A DNA stretch of 64,000 bases, taken from assembly GCF_032062105.1 (NCBI RefSeq), contig NW_026928915.1:124001-188000 (forward strand). Direction: 5' to 3'. The notes below the pieces were generated by a model. It was given only the letters and a program-made list of their open reading frames with translations. It was not told where the DNA came from and made no database searches. The position numbers were made by a program, and so were the translations under genes. Source of the stretch: Saccostrea cucullata. Taxonomy: Eukaryota. Shown here piece after piece: positions 3,959 to 34,239 of the stretch. How positions within the stretch are numbered: the stretch's first letter is position 1; each line of letters opens with the position of its first letter.

Positions 3959-5179
3959 TTACAATCGATGATGTCTATCCGGAACATCTCGCAGAAAAAT
4001 CAACTTTTTAAATCGTTTTTGGGCTTTCAATTTCATTTTTAAGTGCTGGTCCGTATTATCTTCTGGTTCTTTTAAGACATTTTTAAATGGCTCCAGTCGC
4101 ACCATAGGAGTAACATTCTGTCCTTGTTCACGACGGGGTAACTTCCCCACCTTTTTCTTGTCAAAAATCAACAGCTCATCATTCGGAGTTTGGTGTTCCG
4201 GAATGGCCACGAGCTGGGATTGCAGGTTGAGGACATTTCTTGGCGACTGTTTGGGGGGTGGGGAAGGCAGTGTTCGTTCACTCTTTGCCGATCTCTTTTG
4301 GGACGCCACGTCATTTTCAGGAATATCTGCGAGATCTGGTTTGTTTATCTGCATACGTTTGGCACGATTCGGTCTTCTTTTGAAAGCCTCCACATTCGCT
4401 TTATTTAAGTCTAAGCTATCACTATCAGTGTCTGAATTTTCAGAGTCTTGTTCTTTATCTGAACTTTCTATCGGTGGTAATGTTGGCAAAGTACTAAAGT
4501 CTTTAGGGATTTTAGGAGTTGGCGATTCATTGTTGGCACTTTTACTAAGGTTCCTAGAAGACTTTCTATTCCCTGCACCAGGTAGCGGCCGACCGGTAGG
4601 AGAGGGCGTGTGATTATGAATATTATCCATTTCTATGTATCTCAATGTGTCCTCCTTATTTCCCTTATTTCTTATACTAAAATCCACTATATCATATAAA
4701 TCTGAAGCACTCACAAAACTGATTTTCACTTGATGGGACTTTTTGTTATACCGTTCTGGTAGAGAAGGCAGGGATAGTCTTGAGGCTGATTTTGGCTTGT
4801 CTCTCCGAGGTTTGTTTGACTTTGACTTGGCATTCTTGCCTATGAGTTCATCAAATGATGCTGGTCTTCTATCCTTGTTTTTGGTTAGAGGTATCTTTGG
4901 AATATGTTTCGCTCTTACGTATAAGGGTGAATCACTGGATAACATCCCTTCAACACTATTTTTGGTGTTGGTCATCTTACGCATGCGCTCTGTATAAGCT
5001 AACATAGACTCCTTTAGGCCTCTTTCGCGATTTATCATTCTAGACAAAGAAACATCGAACTCTTTTTCATAATGTAAAAGTCGTCGATCATATTCCTGCT
5101 TCAGACGGGAGATCTGGGACGCTGCACGGTTTTCTGTTTGAAAAATTCCTGAACTACTTGAACTAGATGAAGAAGACAT
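3959..5179 (-). CDS. Uncharacterised 406-aa protein, single coding exon, largely low-complexity (S/P/K/R-rich) with a likely N-terminal coiled-coil
   Basis: 1221-nt open frame in AT-rich DNA. Strong acceptor (tctttcatttcag) opens the exon at 5294, 115 nt before the ATG. No domain recognised. Confidence 0.8.
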   Translation of the reverse strand: MSSSSSSSSSGIFQTENRAASQISRLKQEYDRRLLHYEKEFDVSLSRMINRERGLKESMLAYTERMRKMTNTKNSVEGMLSSDSPLYVRAKHIPKIPLTKNKDRRPASFDELIGKNAKSKSNKPRRDKPKSASRLSLPSLPERYNKKSHQVKISFVSASDLYDIVDFSIRNKGNKEDTLRYIEMDNIHNHTPSPTGRPLPGAGNRKSSRNLSKSANNESPTPKIPKDFSTLPTLPPIESSDKEQDSENSDTDSDSLDLNKANVEAFKRRPNRAKRMQINKPDLADIPENDVASQKRSAKSERTLPSPPPKQSPRNVLNLQSQLVAIPEHQTPNDELLIFDKKKVGKLPRREQGQNVTPMVRLEPFKNVLKEPEDNTDQHLKMKLKAQKRFKKLIFLRDVPDRHHRL

Positions 5180-17800: not shown

Positions 17801-18529
17801 AATAGGTTAAACTTACTAGTATATTTTTTTGTTACGGACTCGATATAATACCACGATCGTTGTGCCGTAGAAGACATATCCACTTAGTGGCTTTAAATTC
17901 CAACGGAAAATTATTGCATGTTCATTGAGCATAAAAAGTATGCAAATTTGATACAGGACCAGATATGAGATATGAACTGAGTATTGTAGCCCACCCACTT
18001 TATCAGTTGATTGAAAGCTAGGTATAAGCCCCTGATGGTAGGACAAAGATGGTGATATATTGAAATTGGTTTATATCCTCGAATTTTTTTTTTTACATAT
18101 CGACTTCTCGAAAGTAAACTCTTTGCCAGTCTAATTGAAATTACTCCTTTCATCTCGCTCTTCTTTAATCTATAGTGGATTGATCTTTTCACGAGAGACA
18201 AATAGATAAACGAAGAGCAAGATAAAAGCTCTACTATTAAGTAGATTGATTCTTTGCATTGTTATAATGAGCAGGTAGCCTATCAAGGATTGAAATTCAT
18301 GCCCCCTCGGTCTTATTTGGGCCCAGGGTAGGAATCAGATGATAAAGTTCGGTTTACAATGTACTTTTGATAATAATATTAATTACTGAACATTTAAGAA
18401 GCATAATGTACAGTGTATACAGGTACCTAAAGCTCTGTTCCAAAAGCGGAGGATGATGTATAAGTTGATCATAAATCGAAAATGCGATGTATCTTTATCT
18501 TCCGGAAACAAATTTAAATTTATAAAGAT

Positions 18530-19060
18530 AACTTAAAAATCAAAGAGATATTGATCATATCCGATATAAGAAGCTTATAATACGCAGATAACCTTCAAGG
18601 CCTTTGGACCTATTGTTTTAAATAGAAGCTCTCATGCATATGAAGTTAATAGCTCTCAGTTGATTGATAGAGCAAGAGCATGTTCTATAGTACAATTACT
18701 AGTATTAAAAAAAACGAGATACATGTAGACTGTTGAAAAAAGTTAATGATAAAGGGTATAAAAAATTAGCTTATGTCAACATTTCAGAAATTCTATGGTC
18801 GATACAAAGGCCTTGATTGAAAATATACTCAGTCGTTAGGTCCAATGTTGACTGACGTTCTCAAACGTATTCTTAGGCCATTATTTTCACACAGAATTTT
18901 CTACGGAGTTTTGTGTGTAACCGATCATACAAGGCACAAGGCGGGTATGACCACTCGGCAAAGGATGTCTATTACTCTTTGTCGCCTGATTCCTCCTCTG
19001 TTTTCAAAAGTTCGTAATGCTTATAGTTTGCATTGTTTAAATAGACTTTTGAGGATAATA
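18530..19060 (+). mobile_element. Penelope-like fragment, heavily degraded
   Basis: Remnants ctcagttgatt..gcaagagcatg, ttctatggtcgataca, ggcgggtatgacc. Confidence 0.6.
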
Positions 19061-19824
19061 ACTACTAGTATTAGTTTCTCTTATTTGTTCCGTATTTCGA
19101 AAATTTATTAGAAAAAGACGACAACTGTAACCTTATAACAAAACTAACGAGGAACGTACAATATACACATCATCTGGATACTAGTATGTTGAATGTGTCT
19201 CCCAATACGCGAGTTTCGAGATTGTAACTCTCCTGCGATAGAGGCGCAAAAAGTATCCATTTCAGTATGGAGGTGGGACAGTTTGTTTATGTATACAAAC
19301 GCGCATAAATAAATGAACGATGTTTATGGCTTTTAAAATTTAATTAATGTTATAGAAAGATAAAATGTTAAGCAGTGATGCGTTTTATGATTTTATCAAG
19401 CTCAATTGTGTATATTTACATATCTACTTTCAATTATAGGGTACTTGAAAACGAAATAAACGTCGTGGTCTTTATAAAAAGTAAAAGATTTTCTAGATTG
19501 TACAAACATTGAATTCTCTAAAAAGTAAGTGTTCTTTTGAAGTTATGATAAGGTAAAAAATCCATGTGTCATTTAGATTGCCGACATGTAATGATCAGAT
19601 TCATGTTTACCGTATTTATTAGAGGTCCATATATCTCTTCCCTCGTCTGAAAAGTCTCACATCCTCTGAATTGTCTTTTTTGTTCCGATGTTTTGCTTTA
19701 AAAAATGACACCTTTACTTTAATTCGGTTATTCTCAAGTTGAACAGTGCATCTTTACAATTATAGTTAGATGAACCAGTATATCGATGATGCGATATATC
19801 CAATAATAAATATCTGTCCCACCT

Positions 19825-20960
19825 GTTTGTTTACGCGACAACCAAACTTCCCTCCTCAACGAAAGAGCGCACCAAGGGAGATAATCTCGAAACTTGCGTA
19901 TTGATTCGATACGCAAGAACATGCTCTACGTACAATCAATTTCTAAAACGAGGCAACTATTCACAAACATGATGAAATAATATCAACAGTCTCGTTTAAG
20001 GGGGCCGACTATAGTTTCCATTGCGCAATATTTCGCGCATCATGGTAAAATGAAGCGTATTTACTGTTTTAATGCAACTTTTTTCGCTTAATTATTAAAA
20101 TTAAACAAAATTAAGAAATTATAGGTATAAAAATGTAATTACAATTTGATATAACTGATTTTTTAACCGATTTTGCAATTGATAGGTAGGTTAACGTCGT
20201 TGCAGTGTGTTTTTGACGTTATGATAATCTGTAGCTCTTAAAGAAAGGGATAATAAAAATATCATTAAAGAAAAAGTAAAAAACAGATGCTCTTGAAATT
20301 CAAAATATAGAAATTTGAGAATATCTCCAATATTTTTATTATGTTTTCATGTGAATCCATGGTGTATGTCATATTTTGTATTATACTCTATAAAAATAGT
20401 AAAATTTGCTAATTTTTTGCATTTTGAGATCCCCCCTCTGGTAACAAGACGGTAGAATTTTGTGTTTCTTACATATATTGCATAATATAGTATTATTCAT
20501 CAAATATTATAGTTTGAACAAAATGTCTATTGTAGTATTTGTATAATTTGCTTTAAAGTGCTAAAAATTGGCATTTTCCTATATAATCCTATAGTAAATG
20601 TACCTGTATTTTGAGACGGTCCCTCAAAAATACCTGGACGATAGATTTCCCCCAAACTTTGCATGTACACTGAAGTTAATGTTAGTTATTTATGATATAA
20701 AAATGAAGAGTTTTGCTATTGTAGTTTTCATATAATAAAACTATAGTCGGCCCCCTTAAATCTACATTTCTTAAGTTCTTGGTCGATACAATGATATGTC
20801 AGCAAATACAGTTTATGAAAAATCGAATGCTGACTGGCATTTACACACAGAATTGTCTACGAATGTTTTCATATGACCGATCAGAACAAGGAGCACATGA
20901 CAATAGTGATCGGTCGGCATTTGATGCCTTCTTCTCCATGTCACCTAATCTCAACTCTAA
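19825..20960 (+). mobile_element. Penelope-like fragment split by a MITE insertion
   Basis: Element sequence cagtctcgtTTAA | atctacatttcttaagttcttggtcgataca resumes after the insert at 20000-20755. Confidence 0.7.
20000..20755. mobile_element. Kolobok-like non-autonomous element, TTAA TSD
   Basis: Perfect 18-bp TIR GGGGGCCGACTATAGTTT; TTAA at 19996-19999 and 20756-20759. Purine-purine 5' terminus fits Kolobok rather than piggyBac. Confidence 0.85.
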
Positions 20961-21381
20961 TGATTTTATATTTACATGCTTTCTCCGAAACAATTTTGTT
21001 TCGAAGTTGTTTACTGTTCCTTATCTCCACATCAGACTGCAAAGTTCCAAAACTACGTGGCATGCGTTTAAATATCTGTATTTGCATTTTTTTGTGAATA
21101 TTTGGATTTAAATTAACTTTATGAAAAGCTTTTCATTTTAGAGAGTGTAAACAAACAAAAAAAAAAAAAAAAAATTCGGTTCTTCAATATACGAAGAGTC
21201 GATATTGTCACAACGTTTCCTTAGTGCAAGGCATAATGACTTATCTAAAATTAGTAAAATGAAAACGCAAGGCAAATATTTCACGATCAGTTTATTCTGT
21301 TGATAAAGTGAGTTAACATTAATTTGTTATGTAAACTTAACTTTATTGAGACGTGTTAACAACAAAAAAACTGCACCTTAA

Positions 21382-21815
21382 AGCTGAACACGATAGCAGC
21401 AGGAATAAGTCCGCCATATTCACTTGGTTTCTCGCTATATCTGAAGACCCTTCTTTAAAGCCGCTCACTTAGTCACTTTTCAGTATAATGGGTAGACACC
21501 GGTGTAGACAAATATATGTTCGAAAATAACTGTGTACTTTTTCTAATGCAGGGGAGAAAAGGAAGAAACTTGCAACTGTTGCACAGGGCCGTGCATTATA
21601 TAAACGAACGCAGATGTACATAACTGCAATTGAATGAAAACAAGGGTAATGTAAGATAGCCTTCACGAACACGTGTCGCCATTACACGCCGATACCCGTG
21701 ACAATGAAGAAATCTGGTATAACGTATAACGAATGCGAAAGGTAAACCCTGATACTAATATTGTGGATAGTATGATCGAAAATGGCGTTAGCCTACTTAC
21801 GAATCGTGTTCAGCT
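21382..21815. mobile_element. Kolobok-like MITE, TTAA TSD
   Basis: 13-bp TIR AGCTGAACACGAT; TTAA at 21378-21381 and 21816-21819. Confidence 0.8.
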
Positions 21816-22707
21816 TTAAAACATCATTTTACAAGTACATAAATATACATTCATATTTGGTAAATTATATTCATAAGCTTAATCACAGTAAGCTTTAACA
21901 ATGTTTACCGAATAGAAAAAAAAATAATTGTGCTTTTCGTTTTTAAAAGTTTGCTTTGCTAAAAGAAAGAGGAGGAGAGAGCCCGAAGTCTCTGAATTCC
22001 GAGGAAGAATTTTCTTGAAAATGAATTTAAAATAATTTTAAAAATTCTCTCAAAAAACCTTTTGTTCGTTACTTAATGTTGCCGTATAATGACAAAATGC
22101 TTTCTATGATGTTCGAAAATCGACCGCTCTGCAATCAATCTTATTTATATTTACAACTTTTTAACACTTAAATCAAATTAGGCTTATTGTGAAATTTGGA
22201 ATGGAAATTTAAATATATTGTATGCAGTCAAACATTCATTTTACTTAATAAACATACGTTAAATTAAAAGAAAAAAGATTTTTGATATCGTTATACTTTC
22301 ACCAATATAACCTATGCATTGTGCAATGGAAAAATTTATCAAAATACATGTATAAAAAAGAATAATTCTCTGAAAATTTTAATTATTGTGTATAAATGGT
22401 GCTTCTATCAACAATTTGATAGTTGCTTTTTCATTTTAAAAATTATTTTTTGGCGAAAAAAATTAGTAAAGTTTCAGTGAAGTTTTGCATAATATCAATT
22501 GTCACTTTAACAAAATTCATTCTATGTAAATAATTTCTTAAGACAGCTAATATGGAATTCAGCTGGACGTATTTTTGGTGAATAATTAAATGTTGCATTA
22601 TCTAAAAAAAAAAAAAAAAAAAAAAACTACTTAATTCATCATTTAAATCCATACAAGATGACCCAAAACTTATTCGTATCGAAACCGTTTTTCTCTTTCA
22701 TGGAAAT

Positions 22708-24478
22708 TTACTTAGGTAAGTTGGGATCAAATTCAAATTGTTTTCCTTGGCCTTGCAAGACAACTCCATTTACTGAAATTGAAAATAGGTTAAATCAGTG
22801 GATCTGAAGATAATTAAATAAAACATCCAAACAATCTTACTTTTACTAAATAAAATAAATAAATGAACAAATGCATAAATAAATGCATATTTATTGTATT
22901 CAGTACATTCCAAAGATGGTGCTTTATAGATTTTTTTTGTTTTTGTTTTAAAATACTTGCCTAATTCGGGCACAGAGTCAACGACTCTATCTCCATTAGT
23001 GGCAGTAAGTCGAATGAGGAAAGGCGCCTTGACAGGTCTCTCAATAGGATCCACACCAAATGTCCAGAATCCATCATGGGTGTGAGCAAGGGTGGCCCAA
23101 TTTTGCCACTTCGGTTGAAAGAATTCTACTTTCGTGGCAGGAATTCTACAAAGATTTTGGACAGTTAATTAATGATAAAAAAGATACCCTTTTTTATTTG
23201 AAATGAAGAAAACCTAGAAATGATCTATTTATTAAAAATCATTATGTAACAATTAAAATTTTAAGAATGTACCGAAAGTATTTCTAAATCCTTCCATGTA
23301 GTAATTGTCTCGTCCTTTTATTATATTTTTTTTTATACTTGCCTTGCATTTCTGACTTGAAGCTTGATGTAATAAGGACTGCTCCCTTGAAATTTGTACT
23401 CTAGTGTTGAGTTTCCTACAGGACATTGTATGGCCTGCATTTCCATTCCTAACAACCCATCCACATTCTCAGGTAATGCAGGTACCCCTAAATCAAAGAA
23501 GAAAGAAACCTTGTCTACTGCATATAGAAACCTTTAGATATAAAAAAAAAATCGAGAAAAAAATCTGAATTAAAATTTACCTACCAGGCATACAGTTGGG
23601 ACAAAAATCCTTGACAAAAACTGTAAATGTTCCATCGATCGGCAAGCCTCCATTATATTTACCTGACATGTTTACCTGCAAAATAAAGTTATAAGGTAAA
23701 ATACCAAAACTGAAATTCGTGTTTTAATTGAGCTCGTGATTTTATATTCCGTAAAAAGTTATCTTTCATGAAAAAAAATCTTAAAATACTGGTAAGTTTT
23801 GATTTTTACATATTTACCCAGCATGCTTAAAATATGCACAAAATGGACGAGTTAAGATCACAAAACAGGCAAATTCGGGTAATACATGAAAAGGCATGGT
23901 TTCTTTAAAAAAAAAAAAAAAGTTGCTCAGCAAAACATACCCTATAGCAGACGCCACATCCATATCCACTGTAAAACTGACCAGCGTTGATGGCTATCGT
24001 CCTATCGATGTTCTGTGCAACGGGGGGCATGCTTGGAGGATCGTAGCTACACGTCCCTCCGTGGGTAGCTTCATAAAACATTCCCTGTCCAAAAATGAAA
24101 AAGAAAATGACAGAATTTTTGATTTAATGATTTATCTTCGTCCGACACCTGTAACGTCTACATTCTGAAAACTACAGAATGTAAAGAATTACTTATTGCT
24201 CGTCGTTTTAAAAACAAAATGAGATCAATATTTTTTGAGAATACAGAAAAGGTCCAAAAACTTGAAGCAGTACGAAACATAATAGCCCCCCTCCCCCCAG
24301 CTGAAAGAAATTTCAAAAATGTAGAGGAAATGAACAACTACCTTAAGATTGAAAAGGGTTTTCATTCTACTATACTCACATTTCCTTGATATTTGTATCG
24401 ATAGAGATCTAGAACATCCCTGTTTGTTGTTTGAGCCTGCACTATTCCAAACACGAGAAAAAATATGGCTACAGCCAT
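22708..24478 (-). CDS. Expansin-like protein A (EXLX1/YoaJ-type: DPBB + CBM63-like domain), 242 aa, 6 exons
   Basis: Exons 24478-24380, 24084-23941, 23675-23585, 23487-23343, 23145-22961, 22772-22708. MAVAIFFLVFGIVQAQTTNRDVLDLYRYKYQGNGMFYEATHGGTCSY...IAINAGQFYSGYGCGVCYRV...VFVKDFCPNCMPGVPALPE...QAIQCPVG...FQGSSPYYIKLQVRNARIP...HDGFW...IRLTATNGDRVVD...QFEFDPNLPK*. Exons 2-6 have the same lengths as gene B; introns 4 and 5 use GC donors. Confidence 0.88.
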
Positions 24479-24550
24479 CGTGAAAACAGAAATAATAAAC
24501 AAGGCGTATTTTCCGTGAGATTTTCATCACTGTTTAGCCTGTTTTATTGT

Positions 24551-24557
24551 TTTTATA
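24551..24557 (-). promoter_or_regulatory. TATA box candidate, expansin-like A
   Basis: TATAAAA about 73 nt upstream of the ATG, similar spacing to the TATA of gene B. Confidence 0.5.
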
Positions 24558-25159
24558 TAGATTAACAATTTGTTTCAAGCACGACTTGTCAGCAACAGTC
24601 GAAAGAACGCAAAGATGTCAGTCCCCTGCAAACACGAAGATGGCGGACACAATAAAAATGTCATGGTCACAGTACAGGTGTCTTCTTTCTTTGTACATGG
24701 AGTTTATAAATAATCTCAATTGGAAGAACGATCAATTATCGAGATATATTTAGATGAAAATTAAAAAAGAACGTTGAACCCCTGTTTATTTACAAAGAAA
24801 TCTCAAAACATAATGATTATTTGTAAACAATTCTATGTAGAAAAAATAAAAGTGTATCTATTAATATATCACAATTTCGGTACGTTTAATTGTACGGCTC
24901 ATTATTTTTATTCTACTTTAGAGGAACTTTGATATTGCAAGTGGAAATTCAACTTATTCTCATAGTTACCTTTCTAAACAGAAATTCTTTAAAATAGATT
25001 TAAATATTCTCAATATATTTCCGACAATCAAATGAATTTTAATTAACATTCCTATGGTTCCTTACTACATAGAACCCCTTAGTTTGATAAGAAGGTAATT
25101 CTACCAAGTCTCTTTCTGCATTTCTCTACTTTACTGCAATGAGGGAAAAACTTTATAAG

Positions 25160-25520
25160 ACAAGATGTGTTTGTGAAACACTATGCGCCCGGCAGCAACA
25201 AAATTCGAAAAAGCTATTTTTAGCATATAGGTCACAGTCAAGGTCACATAATCATAGTTCTTTGTGTCATTTGAAAGCACTTAATTAGTGGAGTATGCAT
25301 ACCAAATATGAAGTCTCTATCTCCTATGGTTCGAAAGTTATGGCGAAGTTCGAAAAAGCTATTTTTAGCATATAGGATACAGTCAAGGTTAAAAGGTCAT
25401 TGACCTTGTTGTCAGTTGAAAGTGCTTTTAAATTAGTGGAGTATGCATACCAAAGATGAAGTCTCTATCTCTCACGGTTCAAAGTTATGGCGAAAGTTCG
25501 CAAAACAATATACGCCCTGA
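25160..25520. mobile_element. HINE-like (Helentron-associated) element with ~145-bp internal tandem repeat
   Basis: Two units of ttcgaaaaagctatttttagcatatagg...agtggagtatgcataccaaa...gaagtctctatctc; same family at 62990-63280. Confidence 0.6.
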
Positions 25521-25789
25521 ATATTGGTGTACATCAGGTGTGGATACTTAAACACGCCATGGAACTTTTAAGAACCATAATAAAATTTGAAATCACATAA
25601 TTTTTACAAAACCTTACGATTTTCATCACTTCACACAATTATTTGCAAGACCGTTTATTAAAAACATTCTGATTGTGTATACAAATCTTCGAAGTTGATA
25701 ATTAAATGATGCCCGAGTTCCTGATTGACATTACTGAGTATCAATATACCAGTAGTTTTTGGAGTTTAAGCCCTCCTACAATATGTCAA

Positions 25790-26120
25790 AATTTCGCTGT
25801 TTAGGCCATTATTTACTGAACGAACTATCTACATATAATTTCATTTTCCCCGATCAGGACAAAGGACAGACGGTTGGTTTGAGCGGTCGACAGAGGTTGT
25901 CCACTCCTTTATCCCACCTCTGATGTGTTTAGATGTCCATGTTTGCTCATCTCCTGATTTGTATTTTTATTGGAATATTGAGCATAGTTACTCCCTATCA
26001 TCTTTATATTTCATTACAAACTCCATTGTCTACAGATTTTTATGTTTGCCTGATCATGACAAAAAGTACTGTGTTACCGGTCTAGAGGGGATGTTTACTC
26101 CTCTATGTCTTCCAGTCCCA
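25790..26120 (+). mobile_element. Two degraded Penelope-like 3' tails
   Basis: cccgatcaggacaaagg...cccacctctgatg, followed by cctgatcatgacaaaaag...ggggatgtttactcctct. Confidence 0.5.
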
Positions 26121-26364
26121 TCTCTCTCTTTCTCTCTCTAACAATTAATATAACTATGTACTATCGAGATATATTCAAAACATGAATTCACTCTGTATTA
26201 TAGTGGATAAAATGATGTAGAAAAAATGAAGCTTCTATTCCAATTTATTATAACTATTTGATCATCCAAGAATAGAGTATTCATTTATAAAGCACCACAT
26301 ACATAATTCAAATTTTAAACACTTTTTATGAAACAAGATGACTGGATTTACAGTGGATGTAATG

Positions 26365-28728
26365 TTAATGAGGTAAGGAGGAATCCAGGCTGAATTGTAC
26401 TCCGTCTCCATGTATAACAGCGTCGTTTGCTGAAAATATAAGACATTTCGTGTCAGCAAGCTATATGGAAAATACTAGCATGTAAAATAAAAAGATGCTT
26501 TCGAAATCGTATATCTTTAAAATACATGTATGTTTAAAACGCTAAAAAAAAAAAGACTTGGTTCAACTTGGATCCCTCTTTTAAAAAATATAAATGAACA
26601 TAAAAGGTAAAAGCAACTTTAAAAAAAATTAACATTACAAATCCAAAAGCTGATAAAATAATACATGTATTTTATAAATTAATGATTCTTTTTATTTAAT
26701 CTGTTTATCAATAAAAAATTGGAATGGGTCAAAGGAGCACCATTTTCTTGATATTTACCCAGTCTGGGGATGTGGTCCACCACGGTTTCTCCATTGGCTG
26801 CGGTCAGGCGTACTCTAATTGGAGTGACCACTGGTTTATCAATATGGTCATTGCCGAATATCCAGAATCCGTCTGAAGTGTGACGTAAAGCTGACCATCT
26901 TTGAGACTTTAGTTGATACATCTCCACTTTGGTAGCCGGGATTCTGTCACAAGATCATATTTTTCCTTAATAAAGCTTTGGTGAAATTATGTTTCTATAT
27001 AATTTAAGTTAGGGATTGATCTTATATACGAAAGAGTTTGAAAGAAATATGTCAGCATTGTTGTAATTTTTGACTGATTATGTTTTTAGTTAATTTTGAT
27101 CAAGCTATCATTTTTCTATCTCACCTTGCATTTCGTATTTGTAATTTCAGATACCAGTTATTACTGCCTTGGAATTTGTATTCGATTTTGGTGTTTCCGA
27201 CTGGACACTGGATGGCCTGAATTTGGATCTTCCATCTTCCGTCTCCATTCTCAGCCAAGTCCAAAGAGCCTTATAGCAAAGTAAAGTACTGTTGCATAAT
27301 TTTATAAGGGTACTAGTAACTAATATTTTCAATTCAATCAATGAATTGACTATTTAAAAGGATTGAGTGGTTTTTTTTTTAAAATTAATTATCTGAGAGT
27401 AAAGAGACTTTGATTAAACACTACTCGGAATCAATGCCCATACTAATTCAGGGTTGTTATAAAATAATGTAATTAGCAATGTAATTCATGAATATAAATT
27501 TTTCTGGTTTAGTAATAAATGTCATGAATGTGGAGTTAAAAATTTTGTATCGGTACATGTAAATGTAAATCAATTGTAGTAATCCAGAGGAAGAATATCT
27601 CTGTCTCTACAGTAGCTTTCTCATTAATAAAGTGGTCAGCCAAAGATAAACTGGACACCTCTGTACCCTTTAAGATAAGAACTGACCGGCGTGACATTCC
27701 GGACAGAGGTCCTTGACGTAGACGGTAAAGGTTCCAGTTATTGGGTCATTGCCAGCTCCCTGGCCAGTTCCATGAACCTTGAAAAGATGCAATTTAATTT
27801 AAAATTTTTTTCCCCTTAAAATGTCAATCAATCCGAAAAGAATTTTTAACGTAACAAACAATAGTTAATGGAATGAAACACGTTGAAAATTCACATAAAA
27901 TAGAACAAAAAGGTAAGGCTACTTAGTCTTAACTACGGACATTTGCAAAATCTATGTTAATTGCTTGAAACAAAAAAATAATTTTTTCTCCACTATAGAA
28001 AACAACTAATGCAGCCTGTTTGGTACTCACTCTGAAACACATTCCACATGACAGAGATCCATAGAACTGGGGAGCATTCAGGGCCACCAACTTGTCTAGT
28101 TTACTGGCCACGGGGGGCATACTGGGTGGGGGGTAGCTACAGGTACCACCTGTTCCAGCCCCGTAGTAGGTACCCTAAAATAATAAAGTGGCAAAGTTGT
28201 TTAAAAACACAATTCAAAATAAATATAAACTTGTTTTCCATACCCATAAAATCATTTTTAAGAGTCAAATAAAGGTACCGAAAAGTTTTCGCAATTGTTT
28301 ATTACACGAGTCGAAATTTGCAGTTGCAGTGTACAAATTATAGACACGTGGAGCAGTGTCTTCTAGTTCCATGGAATAAAAAAAAAAATTCTGAACTTAA
28401 GAGTTAACTAAGTCTGTTGGTTGACACTAATTAACCCGATAAGAAAAAGTTTTTGCGTCTGTTTCATCCTCCGGTTTTTACAAATTGTTAACCACTAACT
28501 TTTCTTAAAATAATTAAATTTTTACCATCTCAAATCAGTTAAAATGTTAGCATTGATATTTACACAAAACTTTAAAAATACAGTGAAAACAACATTTTTT
28601 CAAATAAATAATACAATTACATAGATGATACTTACATCGCCGCTATATTTCTGGTGATACAAGTTGAGAATCCCTTGGTGTGCTCCCTCTAGTAAACCAA
28701 AGACAGAAAACAGAATCAGTAAAGTCAT
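26365..28728 (-). CDS. Expansin-like protein B (EXLX1/YoaJ-type), 240 aa, 6 exons
   Basis: Exons 28728-28636, 28174-28031, 27777-27687, 27269-27125, 26943-26759, 26429-26365; all GT-AG and in phase. MTLLILFSVFGLLEGAHQGILNLYHQKYSGDGTYYGAGTGGTCSY...VALNAPQFYGSLSCGMCFRV...VYVKDLCPECHAGSLDLAENGDGRW...QCPVG...GSNNWYLKLQIRNARIP...SDGFW...VRLTAANGETVVD...VQFSLDSSLPH*. Canonical expansin motifs. AATAAA on the minus strand near 26243-26248. Confidence 0.93.
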
Positions 28729-28810
28729 GGTCTACCAATAACCTACAGGACTTTTATCGTTCTCTACAGCCCTTAGGCAGGAATTTATCGTACCAGGTAT
28801 AAAGAGGGGC

Positions 28811-28818
28811 TATTTATA
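28811..28818 (-). promoter_or_regulatory. TATA box candidate, expansin-like B (short form)
   Basis: TATAAATA 83 nt upstream of the ATG. Confidence 0.55.
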
Positions 28819-29189
28819 TTACCACATACCATTAGAGACACCCTACGTGCCGGTGTTGACCGGATCTGTGATTCAGAAATAAGATGTATACTAAACGTCT
28901 CGTTCATCAAAATGTATCCTGGTACTTTGACTATGTTTTTTTTTTTTAACTGAACTATCATTTTTCATTCATGTTCATGTAACGCCATTTTCTATCAAAT
29001 CTGTCATATTTCTCTCAAATATGTGAAGCACCAAATTAACAAAAATTAAAATAATTGATATCTTCGCATAATAGTATATAAACCACTTAACGAGTTGAAT
29101 AAATAAAATCTCCAAATTGCAGAAGTTCTACTTATGCTTTAATTAATTTCAAACTAATGAACAGTGATTGAGCTAAAAAATATAAAAAC

Positions 29190-29540
29190 AATATAATTCT
29201 ATAAAACAAGCCTAAAATACAAGGCCTTAAGAAATTCCAGAGTTAGGGTCAGGTGTCTTGAAGGAGTGAACATCTCCTGTAGACGGTCATGCACGCCATG
29301 AAACCCTATGTGTATTGATTTGGTTGACGGAATATTCCGCATTCAGATTTAGTATAAAAACAAAGGCCTATCAATTTGAATAAATACAGGCTTGTCAAAA
29401 TACGAACAAATTACAAATTTTAATATTACTTACAAGGTCATTTTAATGACTGCAGAATTTAAGAAACGCTGAATTTGAACGAGGTTGTTGAATTTCCTGA
29501 CCTTTGCATTAACTTTTCTGTTAGTTATCTGTTTCAATTA
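29190..29540 (-). mobile_element. Penelope-like 3' fragment, degraded
   Basis: Reverse complement of the shared 3' motif (tcaggtgtcttgaaggagtgaacatctcctgtagacggtcatgcacgcc). Confidence 0.55.
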
Positions 29541-30169
29541 AAAAAAAGTTCGTTGTATAAATTGTAGAAAAGTTGTATGTTTCGATGTATTTACTTTTGG
29601 AAAATTTGGTTGATTTTTAATTAGAATAAAGGTCCTTTAGAGTTTTTGAAAAATGCCACTTCTAGAATATGCTTAGTGAACAAGTTTCTCCTTTATATAT
29701 CAGTTAATAGTTAGGTGTAAATGCAACTTTCTTATCTGTCTTTAATTCAATTTAAGATATGTGGAATTGTTTTGAAGAAAGGTGTAATATAACTGAAGAT
29801 ATATGCAAATACTTAAAATTAAAGATTAAGAAAAATTGATAAAAGATGAAATCAATTGAATTGAAGCTAGGTTAAATTGAAATGTACCTATCTTTAAATC
29901 ATTTGTAGAAATGTTTCATTATCAATTGTGCCTACCTGGTGTAAAGATATACTTTAAATTCACACCCAACTGTAATTGAATTTGGAGAAGCCAGTAAAAG
30001 CGTCCCCTATTAAAACCGTCCCAGTCAAAGCGTCCCTTGATTTTGGTCAAAACACCACTTATAGAACTTTACAGTAAAATGATGTTACAAAACCACCCCC
30101 AAATATTGGCGAGAGAGTCTCCTTATAGAATTTTACAGTAAAATGATGTTACAAAACCGCCCTCAATAC

Positions 30170-30490
30170 CAGCAGTTTCGTCATAATTTCGCAAGTTCTT
30201 TGGTCGATTCAATAACCTTGTCAGCAAATACTATTTATCAAACGTTTTTCTTACTAATTGTTTGGGCATTAAAGACACACTGAATTGTCGACGGATTTTT
30301 CCGTTAAGTCAAGATCGTGACAAGGAACACACGCCGGATGTGACCGGTTAGCAGGGGATGCTCACTCCTCCATGGTACCTGATACCACCTCTGATGTTTT
30401 GGAGGTCTGAGTTTGCTCTGCTCCAAATTTGTATTGTTTAATGGACTTTTGAGCTTGAATACTGTTCGCGATCTCCATATATTTTATTGA
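30170..30490 (+). mobile_element. Penelope-like 3' fragment
   Basis: tttcgcaagttctttggtcgat...gtgaccggttagcaggggatgctcactcctccatggtacctga...cctctgatgttttggaggtc. Confidence 0.8.
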
Positions 30491-30586
30491 AATTAATCGT
30501 AAAAACTATGCATGTAAACGTTTTATGGTTGGAGTAAATCTTAAATCATCTACGTAGGTTTTCCAAAGTAATTTTATTACACCTAC

Positions 30587-33460
30587 CTGTAAGTGCTTCA
30601 GTAGTAGGCGGTTGTGTTGGCACTGCTGTTGAGGGTCGTTTTGTTGGTGCTACAGTTAAAGGTTGTTGTGTTGGTGCTGCGGTCGAAGGTTGCTGTGTTG
30701 GTGCTGCAGTTGAAGGTTGCTGTGTTGGTGCTGCAGTTGAATGTTGCTGAGTTGTTGGTGCTGCAGTTGAGGGTTGTTGTGTTGGTGCTGCAGTTGAGGG
30801 TTGTTGTGTTGGTGCTGCAGTTGAAGGTTGTTGAGTTGTTGGTGCTGCAGTTGAGGGTTGTTGAGTTGGTGCTGCAGTCGAAGGTTGCTGTGTTGGGGCC
30901 GCTGTCGAAGGTTGCTGTGTTGGTGCTTTGGTGGTTGGTGTTGGCATTGAAGTTGAAGGTCTGGGTGTCAGAGTTTGGCCATTTCTATTAATAGTACACG
31001 TTCCAGTTGGCATAGGAAGAGTATCAAAGTCAACTTGAAACCTCAGATTTATTTCATTTTGCCTCGCAGGCCATCTGCTTTTTAACTTATACCATAGCCC
31101 GTTTGTCTGTTGATCTTCAATATCCATTGTCCAATCCTATAACAAACATAATTCTTTAAGTTAAAATCAATCTACTTTTATAAAATTTGATTTCTAGTTA
31201 CCCAGAGTTAGTGCGGATAGTATGATAGAAATTGAGATAGTCTAGTTATCAAGTAAATGAATACACTTCTGATACCGTCATGTCAGAAGTTTCTTTGTCA
31301 AATTCCAATATGATATTATAGGAGTTAAGAACTGGGTTAATCTGGAATGTACAGATTCCGGTCATTCTATAGCGATTTCCAACACTCCAATGTTGTCCCT
31401 CTACGGATATCGGTATGACGTCAGGAAATGATCTTGATATTGCTGTTGTAGATGATCGTGGTCCTGACGTTGCAGTGGGTTGTTGTGTAACTGACGTGGT
31501 ACTTGCTTGTGGTGACGCTGACGCATGCGTAGTGGGTGATTGTGTTGTTGTAGATGGTGGTGTTATGTTACTGATGCATCTTCCCTTCGGAAACCTCTTC
31601 TTGCTACCTCTGTATGTCAAAATGAATTCTGCTTTAAGCATCGTGTTGGAATATGGATATTTGCTTGATAATTCATATGCCCGTCCCTTATTTAGTATTT
31701 TGTCGATGTTCATGATCCATATCTGTTTGAAAAAAATTAAAAAGATAAGCTTTATTGACTATATATGTTAAAAATGCCATTTTTGAACATTTATTTCAGA
31801 ATTTGACGGAGTGAATCCTGTCACTGTCACAAACTTTTGTTCCGAATAGACAAGGATTGTTCAGAATGATTGGGTATTAACAGAAATGAAAACAAATTCA
31901 TCATACATCTAGCCCTATATGGCCCTTTATACAGAGAGCAGCTGAAACATCACTGTTTAGAGTAATCATTCGTCACTGGTGTAGACGGAGGATGCTGTAT
32001 CACTCATGGCGAAAAACAGACACTTTGTGCTTCAGAGTAAGATAACAAAAAATTTACAACAGTTGCGCAGGTCAGTGCAGTATACAAACAAAAATATGCG
32101 TAACTGCAATAAAATTTAATCAATTGTAATGCTAGATAACCAGCAGGAACATGGGTCGCCATTCCACGCCAATACTCGTGACAATAAAGCAGCCAAGTGT
32201 AACGGATGCGAAGAGTATACACCGGTGCTGATATTATAGATAGTAAATAGTAATATCAAAAATATGTAAAATGACGTAAGTCTATTCATATACTAGTCGT
32301 GTTCAGCTTAATTTTCTTTGTGTATGTTAGGATGCACGTAGTTTAGTAGTTTTCTAAAGAGTTCAGCTGCAAATTGATTTATAATGGTTGAGTGATGAAA
32401 AGAGGAGTATGCATATCCTGAGGCTAGCTAAAGAGCTTTACAACATATAAAGATCACATTTGTCATGGATCATTGTATGCTTATTTTTTTTTCTTTTTAA
32501 TAAGTAGAAAAGAGATGAAATTTGCGAATTGATTAAAAAATATCCTACCTGAAGATTTCTAGTAGGTTTGTTAAAGATGAGGTCTATTTTAATTTCTCCC
32601 GCGTCTCTGGATTCGTTCAGTTCGAACACGCACCATCCTTTCATTTTCCGTGCAGTCCTTGTATCTCCCCAAACATTCCCATTCTTTACGGGTACCTCGT
32701 ACATTGCACTCACACCCACCCATAAAGCCGTTAGTATTGATAAAATATACCTGGATTAGAAGGAAATTTCTCATTTGAGTTACTAAGCATGAAGAAATTT
32801 CAAATTAATAAAATGCACTTCATTGTTAGCTGGTAGTTAATTCATGATACTGGTTGGTGACTTGGTTCCTCTTGCTTGGAATTTGACAAAAGTTCGTTTA
32901 GTTTATATTCAAAAAGGAAAATCTGAGATAGGGTGGATATAGTAAATGGTGATGGGAGTTTAAAAAAAACGTAAATATTTTGAATAGGAGCTGCTATTTT
33001 ACAAATCAAAAGTTAAATTAAAGAAAAAAGGATTTTACCTAAAGGCTTATACGACAGGACAACGATAAAAACTTAACATCGAAGTCTTACGCATGAAACT
33101 GTTCCAAGTGTATAATCGTTTTCTTTAAAAAAAAAATCTCAGTTTAAAAAATTTAGTGACCTGTCTACAGTAGATTTGCTGTCTGTGACAATTTTTATAA
33201 AATGCAAGATATGTATTGCAATCGAATTTTCATGACAGTACTGTCAGAAACTTGCATGTTCCAAGCCAAAATCTGAAGTTGGCACACCTATCAATTTTAC
33301 TGATTTTTTTAATATAAAAATTAGCTATAAAAATTAGGTACACTGTATTACATACTCTTTGTTAATCAAAAATTTCAGTAAAATTGGTAGATATAGGATT
33401 CCTATGCTTAAGTTTAGAAAAAAATATGCATAAGATATTATCAAGCAAAACTTACTTCAT
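30587..33460 (-). CDS. Secreted protein N-terminal part: signal peptide, two CBM2-like beta domains and Thr/Pro-rich linkers; probably spliced onto expansin-like B
   Basis: Exons 33460-33456 (ATG AA), 32750-32549, 31722-31276, 31136-30587, in phase (2,0,0), ending in a phase-1 donor G|GTAGGT. Signal MKYILSILTALWVGVSA. Two ~100-aa repeats share P(V/I)..W..M.G.C.F.(L/I)N..I.L.F.K.T..W.M.I..G..Y.L.S..P..F..P.G.C and have a phase-0 intron at the same position. The CBM2-like label rests on motif resemblance to the N-terminal module of molluscan GH9 cellulases and is unverified. Confidence 0.8.
30590..30925 (-). repeat. Coding minisatellite, about 12 units of 27/30 bp, (T)TQQPSTAAP
   Basis: Direct read of DNA and translation. 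Confidence 0.92.
31940..32308. mobile_element. Degenerate copy of the 21382-21815 MITE family, intronic
   Basis: Right end tcgtgttcagc+TTAA and shared internal motifs (ggtgtagac; gttgc(a/g)cagg..gtgca.tata.aaac); left end eroded. Confidence 0.55.
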
Positions 33461-33554
33461 TATGTCTTTTACTAGTGTTTCTCTTCGATTCTCCTTTTCA
33501 GTTTGCTTTTTTCTCCTGTGCTTACTTTTTGATGGTCAGTTTCAAGAGAACCTC

Positions 33555-33562
33555 TATTTATA
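33555..33562 (-). promoter_or_regulatory. TATA box candidate for the CBM2-like unit
   Basis: TATAAATA 95 nt upstream of the ATG at 33460. Confidence 0.55.
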
Positions 33563-34239
33563 TCCTTTAAGAAGTTTTCTTTGGGTCATCAAAATAAGGT
33601 TATGCCGTATCTTTATTTAAATCTCAAGTCCAGTCTTTTATTTTTGTTTGGGTAAAAAGTTTCAATGCAATTCGTGCGTTAACGTTGTGATTCAAGGGTA
33701 CGGTCAGTTTGTTTGAAATGTATACATGTGTTTATTTGGATAAGTTATTAGTTGTCCTAAATTGCTGCATGAAAAATTTAATAGAAACAAAGATGGAATT
33801 GAAAAAAAAGGAATTTACAAATGAATTGGAATATTGAGCTTTCATTTATATATGAACACATGATTTGAGAGATATCCTAAGTATTATCATGTAACAAAGC
33901 ATTTATATGACGATTTCTGGATTTTGTTAATGCATGGTATACTACGCATGCAATAGCCGGGTTTTCAACATACAGGTGTATGTATTATCGTCCGCTAATT
34001 ATTTATCAATTATTTTTCATTGATCTTAAACCAAAATCACTTACACTTATGATTACAAGAGTTTATATTTTTTGAAAGAGTTTAATTTAATTTTTGATTG
34101 GTTTATTTAAAAAAAAAAACAGTGTCGGAATGCCATTGTTTTCAATAGGTTGCCATTTAAGTAAGGAGGAATTTTATTTTTGATTTAAATATTTGTCATA
34201 TTTTACCACAGAGATTAACATATAATTTATATTTGAATA

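What the first reader, a model, noticed from the sequence alone, without database searches (positions are those of the whole stretch)
26365..33460. Predicted modular expansin (CBM2-like x2, mucin stalk, expansin) built through a dual-use exon
Seen: the CBM2-like unit's stalk exon ends at 30587 in a phase-1 donor (ACA G|GTAGGT). The signal-peptide codons of expansin B (ctgattctgttttctgtctttggtttacTAG|AG GGA GCA CAC) also read as branch point, pyrimidine tract and acceptor. Splicing to 28688 is in frame and removes almost exactly the signal peptide, giving a 628-aa protein. Both ATGs have their own TATAAATA and signal peptide, and B's signal resembles that of paralogue A, so the short form also looks real. 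Established: CBM-linker-expansin architectures occur in fungal swollenin (CBM1) and some bacterial CBM2-expansins. Inference: one animal locus makes both a free expansin and a polysaccharide-tethered form from alternative promoters, possibly for loosening algal or plant cell walls in digestion.
Basis: partly seen in the sequence, partly recalled or inferred. Interest (0 to 1): 0.82.

Follow-up and report, generated by a model that had tools for sequence, protein, structure and literature searches.

The report
Cellulase-derived CBM gene beside oyster expansins
In the hooded oyster, the front half of a cellulase gene (secretion signal, two cellulose-binding modules and a mucin-like linker) was copied long ago to a spot just upstream of two expansin genes; a splice joining it to the first expansin fits the reading frame, but nothing found here shows that the splice is used.

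Summary

The genome is Saccostrea cucullata. The "CBM2-like x2 + stalk" unit is a truncated copy of the 5' part of a GH9 cellulase gene. Its paralogue on contig C18808 runs from the same stalk exon into a full GH9 domain. Homology to that parent ends right after ACAGGT. The modules are divergent CBM2 by profile and fold comparison. The copy is old (dS 0.39) and constrained (dN/dS 0.29).

Expansins B and A are real two-domain expansin-like genes with their own promoters.

No evidence supports the fusion:
- RefSeq models the locus as a stand-alone 397-aa "mucin-2-like" protein that reads through the donor to the stop at 30546. AATAAA follows 58 nt later.
- No protein combining this module with an expansin domain turned up in either database search.
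- The other haplotype has 26.9 kb of repeats between the two genes.
- No RNA run was listed, so the splice is untested.

My odds: separate genes about 0.6, a real fusion isoform about 0.2. The scan's note s1-722173 already flagged the expansins on this same window.

The parts
33555..33562 (-). TATAAATA box of the CBM-unit gene, about 100 nt before its ATG
   Evidence: Read directly. The region 33700-33423 is 76% identical to the promoter and exon 1 of the GH9 paralogue on C18808.
33456..33460 (-). Exon 1 of the CBM-unit gene: ATGAA, donor GTAAGT
   Evidence: The RefSeq model of the C18808 paralogue (P0001, starting MKYS...) uses the same 5-nt coding exon. RefSeq models of this locus omit it and start at Met18.
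32549..32750 (-). Exon 2: rest of the signal peptide and first half of CBM2-like module 1
   Evidence: Splice junction NLQ|IWIM is confirmed by spliced database proteins P0001, P0009 and P0025.
31276..31722 (-). Exon 3: second half of module 1, a Ser/Thr linker and the first half of module 2
   Evidence: Only 8 relatives among 1.84 billion representatives, and those with a named domain carry GH9.
30587..31136 (-). Exon 4: second half of module 2 and a roughly 150-aa stalk of PTQQPSTAA-type repeats, ending in the phase-1 donor ACAG|GTAGGT
   Evidence: Homology to the GH9 parent runs to ACAGGT and stops there.
30546..30586 (-). Read-through tail (GRCNKITLENLRR, then stop) used in the RefSeq model
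   Evidence: The haplotig has the same tail with an in-frame 3-nt insertion.
30483..30488 (-). AATAAA 58 nt after the read-through stop
   Evidence: It lies at the edge of the interspersed repeat.
30180..30496 (-). SINE-like interspersed repeat directly after the truncated gene
   Evidence: More than 7,500 first-look candidates in the genome, about 80% identity.
29382..29743 (.). Breakpoint interval: the allelic contig C19695 carries 26.9 kb of nested repeats here
28811..28818 (-). TATAAATA box of expansin B
   Evidence: The promoter is 96% identical between haplotypes.
28636..28728 (-). Expansin B exon 1, holding the signal peptide and the acceptor-like AG at 28690-28689
   Evidence: The 5'UTR and signal-peptide codons show no difference between haplotypes over 99 nt.
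26365..28174 (-). Expansin B exons 2-6 (28174-28031, 27777-27687, 27269-27125, 26943-26759, 26429-26365)
   Evidence: For exon 2 the best solved-structure match is the Clavibacter expansin (E 0.11). Exon 5 matches Pfam Expansin_C (E 0.03) and Phl p 2 (E 0.027). Its model's 11 best Foldseek matches are all expansins or expansin domain-2 allergens.
22708..24487 (-). Expansin A, a tandem paralogue with six exons, 57-64% identical to B in exons 2-5

Best explanation
Three separate genes lie head to tail on the minus strand of a Saccostrea cucullata contig. The first (33460-30546) is an old partial duplicate of a GH9 endoglucanase gene. It kept the promoter, signal peptide, two divergent CBM2 modules and the O-glycosylation-type linker, and it lost the catalytic domain exactly at the linker/GH9 boundary. 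It most likely makes a secreted, non-catalytic, mucin-like polysaccharide-binding protein. Its last exon reads through the GTAGGT site for 13 more codons to the stop at 30546 and is polyadenylated after the AATAAA at 30488. Expansins B and A are transcribed from their own TATA promoters and secreted through their own signal peptides. Shown here: the origin, the architecture, the fold, the purifying selection and the annotation. Inferred: the 3' end of the transcript, secretion, and binding to cellulose or chitin.
For: 1. Origin. The paralogue on C18808 is 76-90% identical across exons 2-4, and its exon 4 runs from the same stalk into the GH9 N-terminus. All further GH9 exons follow it. P0003 and P0009 show the full signal-CBM-CBM-stalk-GH9 architecture.
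2. Truncation. The window and its haplotig hold no GH9 remnant. Homology ends right after ACAGGT.
3. Fold. CBM2 is supported.
4. Constraint. dN/dS is 0.29 at dS 0.39 against the parent, the roughly 400-codon frame is intact, and the branch is no longer than the parent's.
5. Annotation. RefSeq XP_062617521.1 equals exons 2-4 plus the read-through tail exactly, and XP_062586785.1 does the same on the haplotig.
6. 3' end. AATAAA lies 58 nt after that stop.
7. No fusion on record. None appeared among the relatives of 249-791 aa, nor among the 8 representatives.
8. Distance. The haplotig separates the unit from expansin B by about 29 kb of repeats.
9. Expansin B stands alone. It has its own conserved promoter, 5'UTR and signal peptide, and all its exons are intact at 93-100% aa identity in both haplotypes.
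Against: No RNA data could be laid on the locus, so the 3' end is only modelled. The RefSeq models miss the 5-nt first coding exon, which suggests weak transcript support and perhaps an ab initio 3' end. CAG|GTAGGT is a near-consensus donor only 40 nt before the stop. A 150-aa linker with nothing attached is an odd end for a protein, yet it has stayed open. The acceptor-like site in B is in frame, removes almost exactly the signal peptide, and sits in a 99-nt stretch without any difference between haplotypes. CBM2-CBM2-expansin is a known working architecture in bacteria (bioRxiv 10.1101/637728).
Confidence: 0.6

Rival explanations
1. One reading: transcripts from the upstream promoter skip the weak terminal signals and splice 30587 to 28688 inside expansin B's first exon. 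This yields a 628-aa secreted CBM2-CBM2-stalk-expansin alongside the free 240-aa expansin made from B's own promoter.
For: The frame and length are correct. The donor is strong, and its last four bases arose at the truncation point. The acceptor tract has 75% pyrimidines, no AG in the last 20 nt and a branch-like CTGAT. Donor and acceptor are kept in both haplotypes. The 5'UTR and signal-peptide codons of B are invariant over 99 nt. The linker has been kept open over dS 0.39. The architecture works in bacteria and fungi (bioRxiv 10.1101/637728).
Against: No RNA or protein record exists. RefSeq models the genes apart. A stop and AATAAA follow the donor closely. Four equally good acceptor-like sites lie upstream of 28688. 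On the other haplotype the intron would be about 29 kb of repeats. Paralogue A shows that signal-peptide codons mimic acceptors without any upstream partner. Read-through chimeras usually join to exon 2 of the downstream gene (general knowledge), and that join would be out of frame here.
Confidence: 0.2
2. The stalk exon's donor is used but joins a cryptic acceptor in the 1.9-kb spacer (for example 29811, 29172 or 29085). This gives a short alternative C-terminus and an end before expansin B's promoter.
For: Four acceptor-like sites with 70-80% pyrimidines, plus several ATTAAA signals, lie in the spacer. The donor is strong.
Against: None of these sites has any support. The spacer downstream of 29743 is not shared with the other haplotype, so such an exon would be allele-specific.
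Confidence: 0.1
3. The CBM unit is a transcriptionally dead or decaying gene fragment, and the open frame is a leftover.
For: It is a truncated duplicate followed by a transposon-like repeat. RefSeq found no first exon. The haplotig shows no promoter or exon 1 within 3 kb. No transcript-derived protein was found.
Against: dN/dS of 0.29 over dS 0.39 and an unbroken frame of about 400 codons are not expected from neutral decay. I estimate roughly ten nonsense changes would be expected at that divergence (inference). The promoter, TATA box, exon 1 and all splice sites are intact in the window.
Confidence: 0.1

Closest known systems
Molluscan GH9 endoglucanases with N-terminal CBM2 (here S. cucullata C18808/XP_062584516.1, S. 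echinata LOC133182894 = P0009, and P0003; the Corbicula japonica cellulase CBM2 was shown to bind crystalline cellulose, as cited in PMC11805347)
   Same: Same promoter and exon 1, same signal peptide, same two modules split by introns at the same positions, same repeat linker. The module region is 83-88% identical.
   Different: The catalytic GH9 domain is absent. The copy ends 13 codons after the linker.
Bacterial CBM2-expansin and CBM2-CBM2-expansin fusions, and fungal swollenin (CBM1-linker-expansin-like)
   Same: If the splice were used, the domain order would be the same: binding module(s), linker, two-domain expansin (bioRxiv 10.1101/637728).
   Different: Those are single open reading frames. 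Here the parts are two genes with separate promoters, and the join is hypothetical. The CBM2 is of animal GH9 origin and was not co-inherited with the expansin.
Plant-parasitic nematode secreted CBM2 proteins (cellulose-binding proteins) and Gr-EXPB1 (CBM2 plus expansin-like domain); cited from my own knowledge, not checked here
   Same: Animal-encoded, secreted, non-catalytic CBM2 proteins acting on foreign cell walls.
   Different: Different lineage and origin. Single module and no mucin-like stalk. The nematode domain order is described as reversed relative to canonical expansins (bioRxiv 10.1101/637728).
Bivalve expansin-like genes
   Same: Expansin genes are annotated in several marine bivalves (bioRxiv 10.1101/637728). 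B and A show a two-domain layout by exon-wise matches.
   Different: That preprint left contamination open. Here the genes carry five introns each, sit between animal genes and occur on both haplotypes, so they are oyster genes.
Transcription-induced chimeras (conjoined genes)
   Same: Same-strand neighbours 1.9 kb apart with a usable donor upstream.
   Different: Such chimeras normally join to the downstream gene's second exon (general knowledge). Here only an acceptor inside exon 1 keeps the frame.

Membership tests
CBM family 2 (Pfam CBM_2, PF00553) | Sequence match to the family profile | tested here: inconclusive
   Pfam finds no CBM_2 in the exons, in P0025 or in oyster GH9 proteins, nor in six frames of the genome. 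A profile of the oyster modules matches Pfam-CBM_2-positive modules from the same position of other invertebrate GH9 enzymes: hhalign probability 80%, E 1.4e-5, 71 columns.
CBM family 2 (Pfam CBM_2, PF00553) | Beta-sandwich fold of about 100 residues like solved CBM2 domains | tested here: met
   The model has pLDDT 89.5 and nine strands. The best matches are 6qfs, 3ndy, 1exg, 1xbd, 2cwr and the binding domain of 6bt9, with Z 7.3-9.2 over 85-95 residues. Z values of this size are only moderately specific.
CBM family 2 (Pfam CBM_2, PF00553) | Conserved surface aromatics and a disulfide pair; binding to cellulose or chitin | not testable with these tools
   W12, W54, Y68, C25 and C101 are invariant in 9 modules. 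Their placement on one face and actual binding were not tested.
GH9 endoglucanase | Glyco_hydro_9 catalytic domain | tested here: not met
   No PF00759 match on the window contig or its haplotig. tblastn with the S. echinata GH9 domain finds nothing better than E 1. The gene is derived from a GH9 gene but is not one.
Expansin (two-domain, D1 DPBB + D2 CBM63) | C-terminal domain 2 (Expansin_C / CBM63) | tested here: met
   Exon 5 matches Pfam Expansin_C at E 0.03, below the cut-off. A profile of 4 copies has Phl p 2 as its best solved match, E 0.027. The Atlas's nearest clusters carry Expansin_C. The model of exon 5 (pLDDT 76) has 11 best matches that are all expansins or group-2/3 allergens. 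Each test is weak, but all agree.
Expansin (two-domain, D1 DPBB + D2 CBM63) | N-terminal domain 1 (double-psi beta-barrel) with conserved Cys pattern and Asp motif | tested here: inconclusive
For exon 2 the best solved matches are bacterial expansins at residues 8-50, but at E 0.11 and 0.87. There was no Pfam hit on single exons.
CBM-linker-expansin fusion proteins (swollenin-like, bacterial CBM2-expansin) | Binding module and expansin in one polypeptide | not testable with these tools
   No RNA run was listed. No fusion protein is on record. The annotated products are separate. Absence from annotation is not proof.

The most novel reading that the evidence does not exclude
An oyster has assembled, by partial duplication of a cellulase gene next to an expansin gene, a nascent modular expansin (CBM2-CBM2-mucin stalk-expansin). 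The fused form would be made by splicing into the expansin's signal-peptide codons, while the free expansin is still made from its own promoter. That would be an animal re-invention of the bacterial CBM2-expansin and fungal swollenin design, caught at the two-gene stage and polymorphic for a 27-kb insertion in the would-be intron.
Probability: 0.2. Interest if true: 0.75.

Novelty: new member of a known kind. Interest (0 to 1): 0.42.

Why it matters
Animal expansins and animal CBM-only proteins are hardly studied, and bivalve expansins have even been suspected of being contamination. This locus shows intron-rich, haplotype-confirmed oyster expansins. It also shows a constrained, secreted CBM2-mucin protein derived from a cellulase. 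Such a protein fits the published idea that bivalves use CBMs in mucus to hold plant or algal particles (PMC11805347). If the proposed splice were real, it would be a clear example of domain shuffling in progress and of convergent design of cell-wall-loosening proteins. One RT-PCR would decide it.

Tried and rejected
- Word search with the last 74 aa of the stalk plus tail found nothing in the 41-130 aa range.
- Word search with expansin A's 132-aa open frame found nothing in the 73-231 aa range. Both blanks say nothing about longer proteins, so RefSeq's model of expansin B could not be retrieved.
- The look-up of encoding contigs had no record for P0025.
- Pfam on single exons was blank except for exon B5. 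Six-frame scans of the genome with CBM_2 and Expansin_C were blank, and the Expansin_C scan rang nowhere, so it is uninformative.
- A position weight matrix built from only 13 local acceptors ranked the 28688 site 60th of 102. I discard it as overfitted and use pyrimidine content and the AG-exclusion rule instead.
- I looked for GH9 remnants downstream, to test whether the donor is the parent's own exon-4 donor left by an internal deletion. None was found, and the tail scores no better than shuffles against the parent.
- The tree could not place the duplication before or after the S. cucullata / S. echinata split (trichotomy).
- The spliced (joined) protein models of expansin B and of the 628-aa fusion were not sent to any search, fold or look-up tool, by the operators' rule. 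Exons were searched one by one by reference, and only frame and length arithmetic was done locally.


Full report
**Observation.** I read the minus strand of 26000-34000 and rebuilt the models.
- The upstream gene has four exons: 33460-33456, 32750-32549, 31722-31276 and 31136-30587.
- They encode a signal peptide, two modules of about 100 aa each split by an intron at the same place, a Ser/Thr linker and a stalk of about 150 aa made of PTQQPSTAA-type repeats.
- Exon 4 ends ACAG|GTAGGT in phase 1.
- Expansin B has six exons from 28728 to 26365.
- The AG at 28690-28689 inside its signal-peptide codons follows a 75% pyrimidine tract.
- Joining 30587 to 28688 gives codon G|AG, and 1204 + 683 nt make 628 codons.
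- TATAAATA boxes lie at 33562-33555 and 28818-28811.

All statements of fact in the finding are therefore correct.

**What the upstream unit is.** A search of the window's own genome with exon 3 found a near-identical copy on contig C19695, an 81% copy on C18808 and distant copies on C77.
- On C18808 the homologous exon 4 does not stop after the stalk. It runs on into a GH9 N-terminus (...ILFYEAQ...DLTGGWYD).
- All further Glyco_hydro_9 exons follow on that contig.
- An exhaustive HMMER search with exon 3 returned only 8 proteins from 1.84 billion representatives. Those with any named domain carry GH9, including an 806-aa signal-CBM-CBM-stalk-GH9 protein.
- The word search named the organism, Saccostrea cucullata, and gave the S. 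echinata orthologue of the C18808 gene (782 aa, full GH9).
- The window and its haplotig contain no GH9 remnant.
- Local alignment shows that homology with the parent runs through the parental codons ACA GGT (Thr-Gly) and ends immediately after them. The GT of the "donor" is therefore inherited, and only the following AGGT is new.
- About 90 nt further on, a SINE-like repeat with thousands of genomic copies begins.

The unit is thus a 5' partial duplicate of a GH9 cellulase gene, cut exactly at the linker/catalytic-domain boundary.

**Is it CBM2?** Pfam does not see CBM_2 in the oyster modules.
- A profile of nine oyster modules matches the Pfam-CBM_2-positive modules that occupy the same position in other invertebrate GH9 enzymes: hhalign probability 80%, E 1.4e-5.
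- An AlphaFold model of module 1 (pLDDT 89.5, nine strands) has CBM2-type cellulose-, xylan- and chitin-binding domains as its best matches. Foldseek's first is 6qfs. VIA-align gives Z 7.3-9.2 for 6bt9, 6qfs, 3ndy, 1xbd, 2cwr and 1exg.
- Two Cys and three aromatic positions are invariant.

"CBM2-like" is supported as a divergent CBM2. Binding itself is inferred.

**Is it a living gene?** Against the C18808 parent, dS is 0.39 and dN/dS is 0.29. Between the two haplotypes there are 7 nonsynonymous and 4 synonymous differences.
- The frame of about 400 codons is unbroken.
- The promoter, TATA box, 5-nt first coding exon and all splice sites are in place.
- In a protein tree the truncated copy, the S. 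cucullata GH9 gene and the S. echinata GH9 gene form an unresolved trichotomy. The truncated copy's branch is no longer than the parent's.

This indicates an old duplicate that has stayed under purifying selection, not a decaying fragment.

**The expansins.** The joined protein could not be searched, so each exon was tested alone.
- Exon 5 matches Pfam Expansin_C at E 0.03.
- A four-copy profile of exon 5 has the domain-2 allergen Phl p 2 as its best solved match, at E 0.027.
- The Atlas's nearest clusters carry Expansin_C.
- A model of exon 5 alone has 11 best Foldseek matches that are all expansins or their domain-2 relatives: the Clavibacter, Xanthomonas and Bacillus expansins, Phl p 1/2/3 and Zea m 1.
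- For exon 2 the best solved matches are bacterial expansins at the expected N-terminal position, but weakly.
- B and A each have five introns, their own TATA box and related signal peptides.
- Both are intact on the second haplotype at 93-100% aa identity for B, although the introns differ by 8-22%.

These are real oyster genes, not contamination, which the literature had left open (bioRxiv 10.1101/637728). The scan's own note s1-722173 had already flagged them on this window.

**The fusion.** Nothing found here supports it, and several points weigh against it.
- RefSeq protein XP_062617521.1 ("mucin-2-like", 397 aa) equals exons 2-4 of this window plus the read-through tail ending at the stop at 30546. 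XP_062586785.1 does the same on C19695.
- These models lack the 5-nt first exon, whereas the parent's model has it. Transcript support was probably thin, and I give the models modest weight.
- AATAAA lies 58 nt after that stop.
- No protein with this module and an expansin domain appears among relatives of 249-791 aa or among the 8 representatives.
- C19695 is collinear with window 18036-33250 and is evidently the other haplotype. It carries 26.9 kb of nested repeats without long open frames between window positions 29382 and 29743. There the two genes lie about 29 kb apart.
- Four other acceptor-like sites of equal pyrimidine content lie before 28688.
- Paralogue A's signal-peptide codons also mimic an acceptor, in another phase.

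Points in favour of the fusion:
- The donor is near-consensus and was created at the truncation point.
- The acceptor is in frame and removes 13 of the roughly 15 signal-peptide residues.
- Both sites are kept in both haplotypes.
- B's 5'UTR plus signal-peptide codons form a 99-nt stretch with no difference between haplotypes. Runs of 92-126 nt also occur in exons 2 and 4, and promoter-proximal function would explain it equally well.
- A long linker with nothing attached has stayed open.

No RNA run was listed for the locus, and short-fragment searches were blank. The question stays experimentally open.

**Verdict.** The sequence observation is confirmed, and the domain calls are largely right. 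The unit's origin as a cellulase front end is new information. The "dual-use exon" is a paper possibility that I rate at about 0.2. The most likely state (about 0.6) is three separate genes: a secreted CBM2-CBM2-mucin protein and two free expansins. Smaller odds go to a cryptic terminal exon in the spacer (0.1) and to a silent fragment (0.1).

Noticed in passing
window 44651-46861 and 50914-53130 (+): Two intronless paralogous genes of 736 and 738 aa with an N-terminal F-box and leucine-rich repeats (Pfam F-box-like E 7e-11 and 9e-11).
   Followed up: partly
window 30180-30496: SINE-like interspersed repeat with more than 7,500 first-look candidates in the genome at about 80% identity. It abuts the truncated gene and supplies the AATAAA at 30488.
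   Followed up: partly
G000:C19695:46896-73823 (L015, L016, L007): A block of 26.9 kb of nested tandem-like repeats (units 1-2.4 kb, 73-92% alike, no open frame over 131 aa). It is present in one haplotype and replaced by 361 bp in the window (29382-29743). Contig C7658 repeats part of it.
   Followed up: partly
G000:C19695:77574-80633 (L010): Upstream of window position 33250 the haplotig shares no sequence with the window for 3 kb. Exon 1 and the promoter of the CBM gene were not found on that haplotype.
   Followed up: partly
window 28688-28786: The 5'UTR and signal-peptide codons of expansin B are identical over 99 nt between haplotypes that differ by 5-20% in the surrounding sequence.
   Followed up: yes
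window 33456-33460; G000:C18808:257304-264221: Likely annotation flaws in RefSeq. XP_062617521.1 and XP_062586785.1 start at Met18 and so lack the signal peptide encoded partly by a 5-nt first coding exon. XP_062584516.1 ends at 452 aa although all GH9 exons follow on the contig.
   Followed up: partly
G000:C18808:249213-253473 and G000:C77:101590-108752: Further GH9 genes, some with distant copies of the same CBM-like modules. C18808 has a second GH9 gene downstream with an exon-1-like sequence 77% identical to the window's.
   Followed up: no
window 3959-5179 (-): A 406-aa open frame rich in Ser, Lys and Pro with no Pfam match.
   Followed up: no
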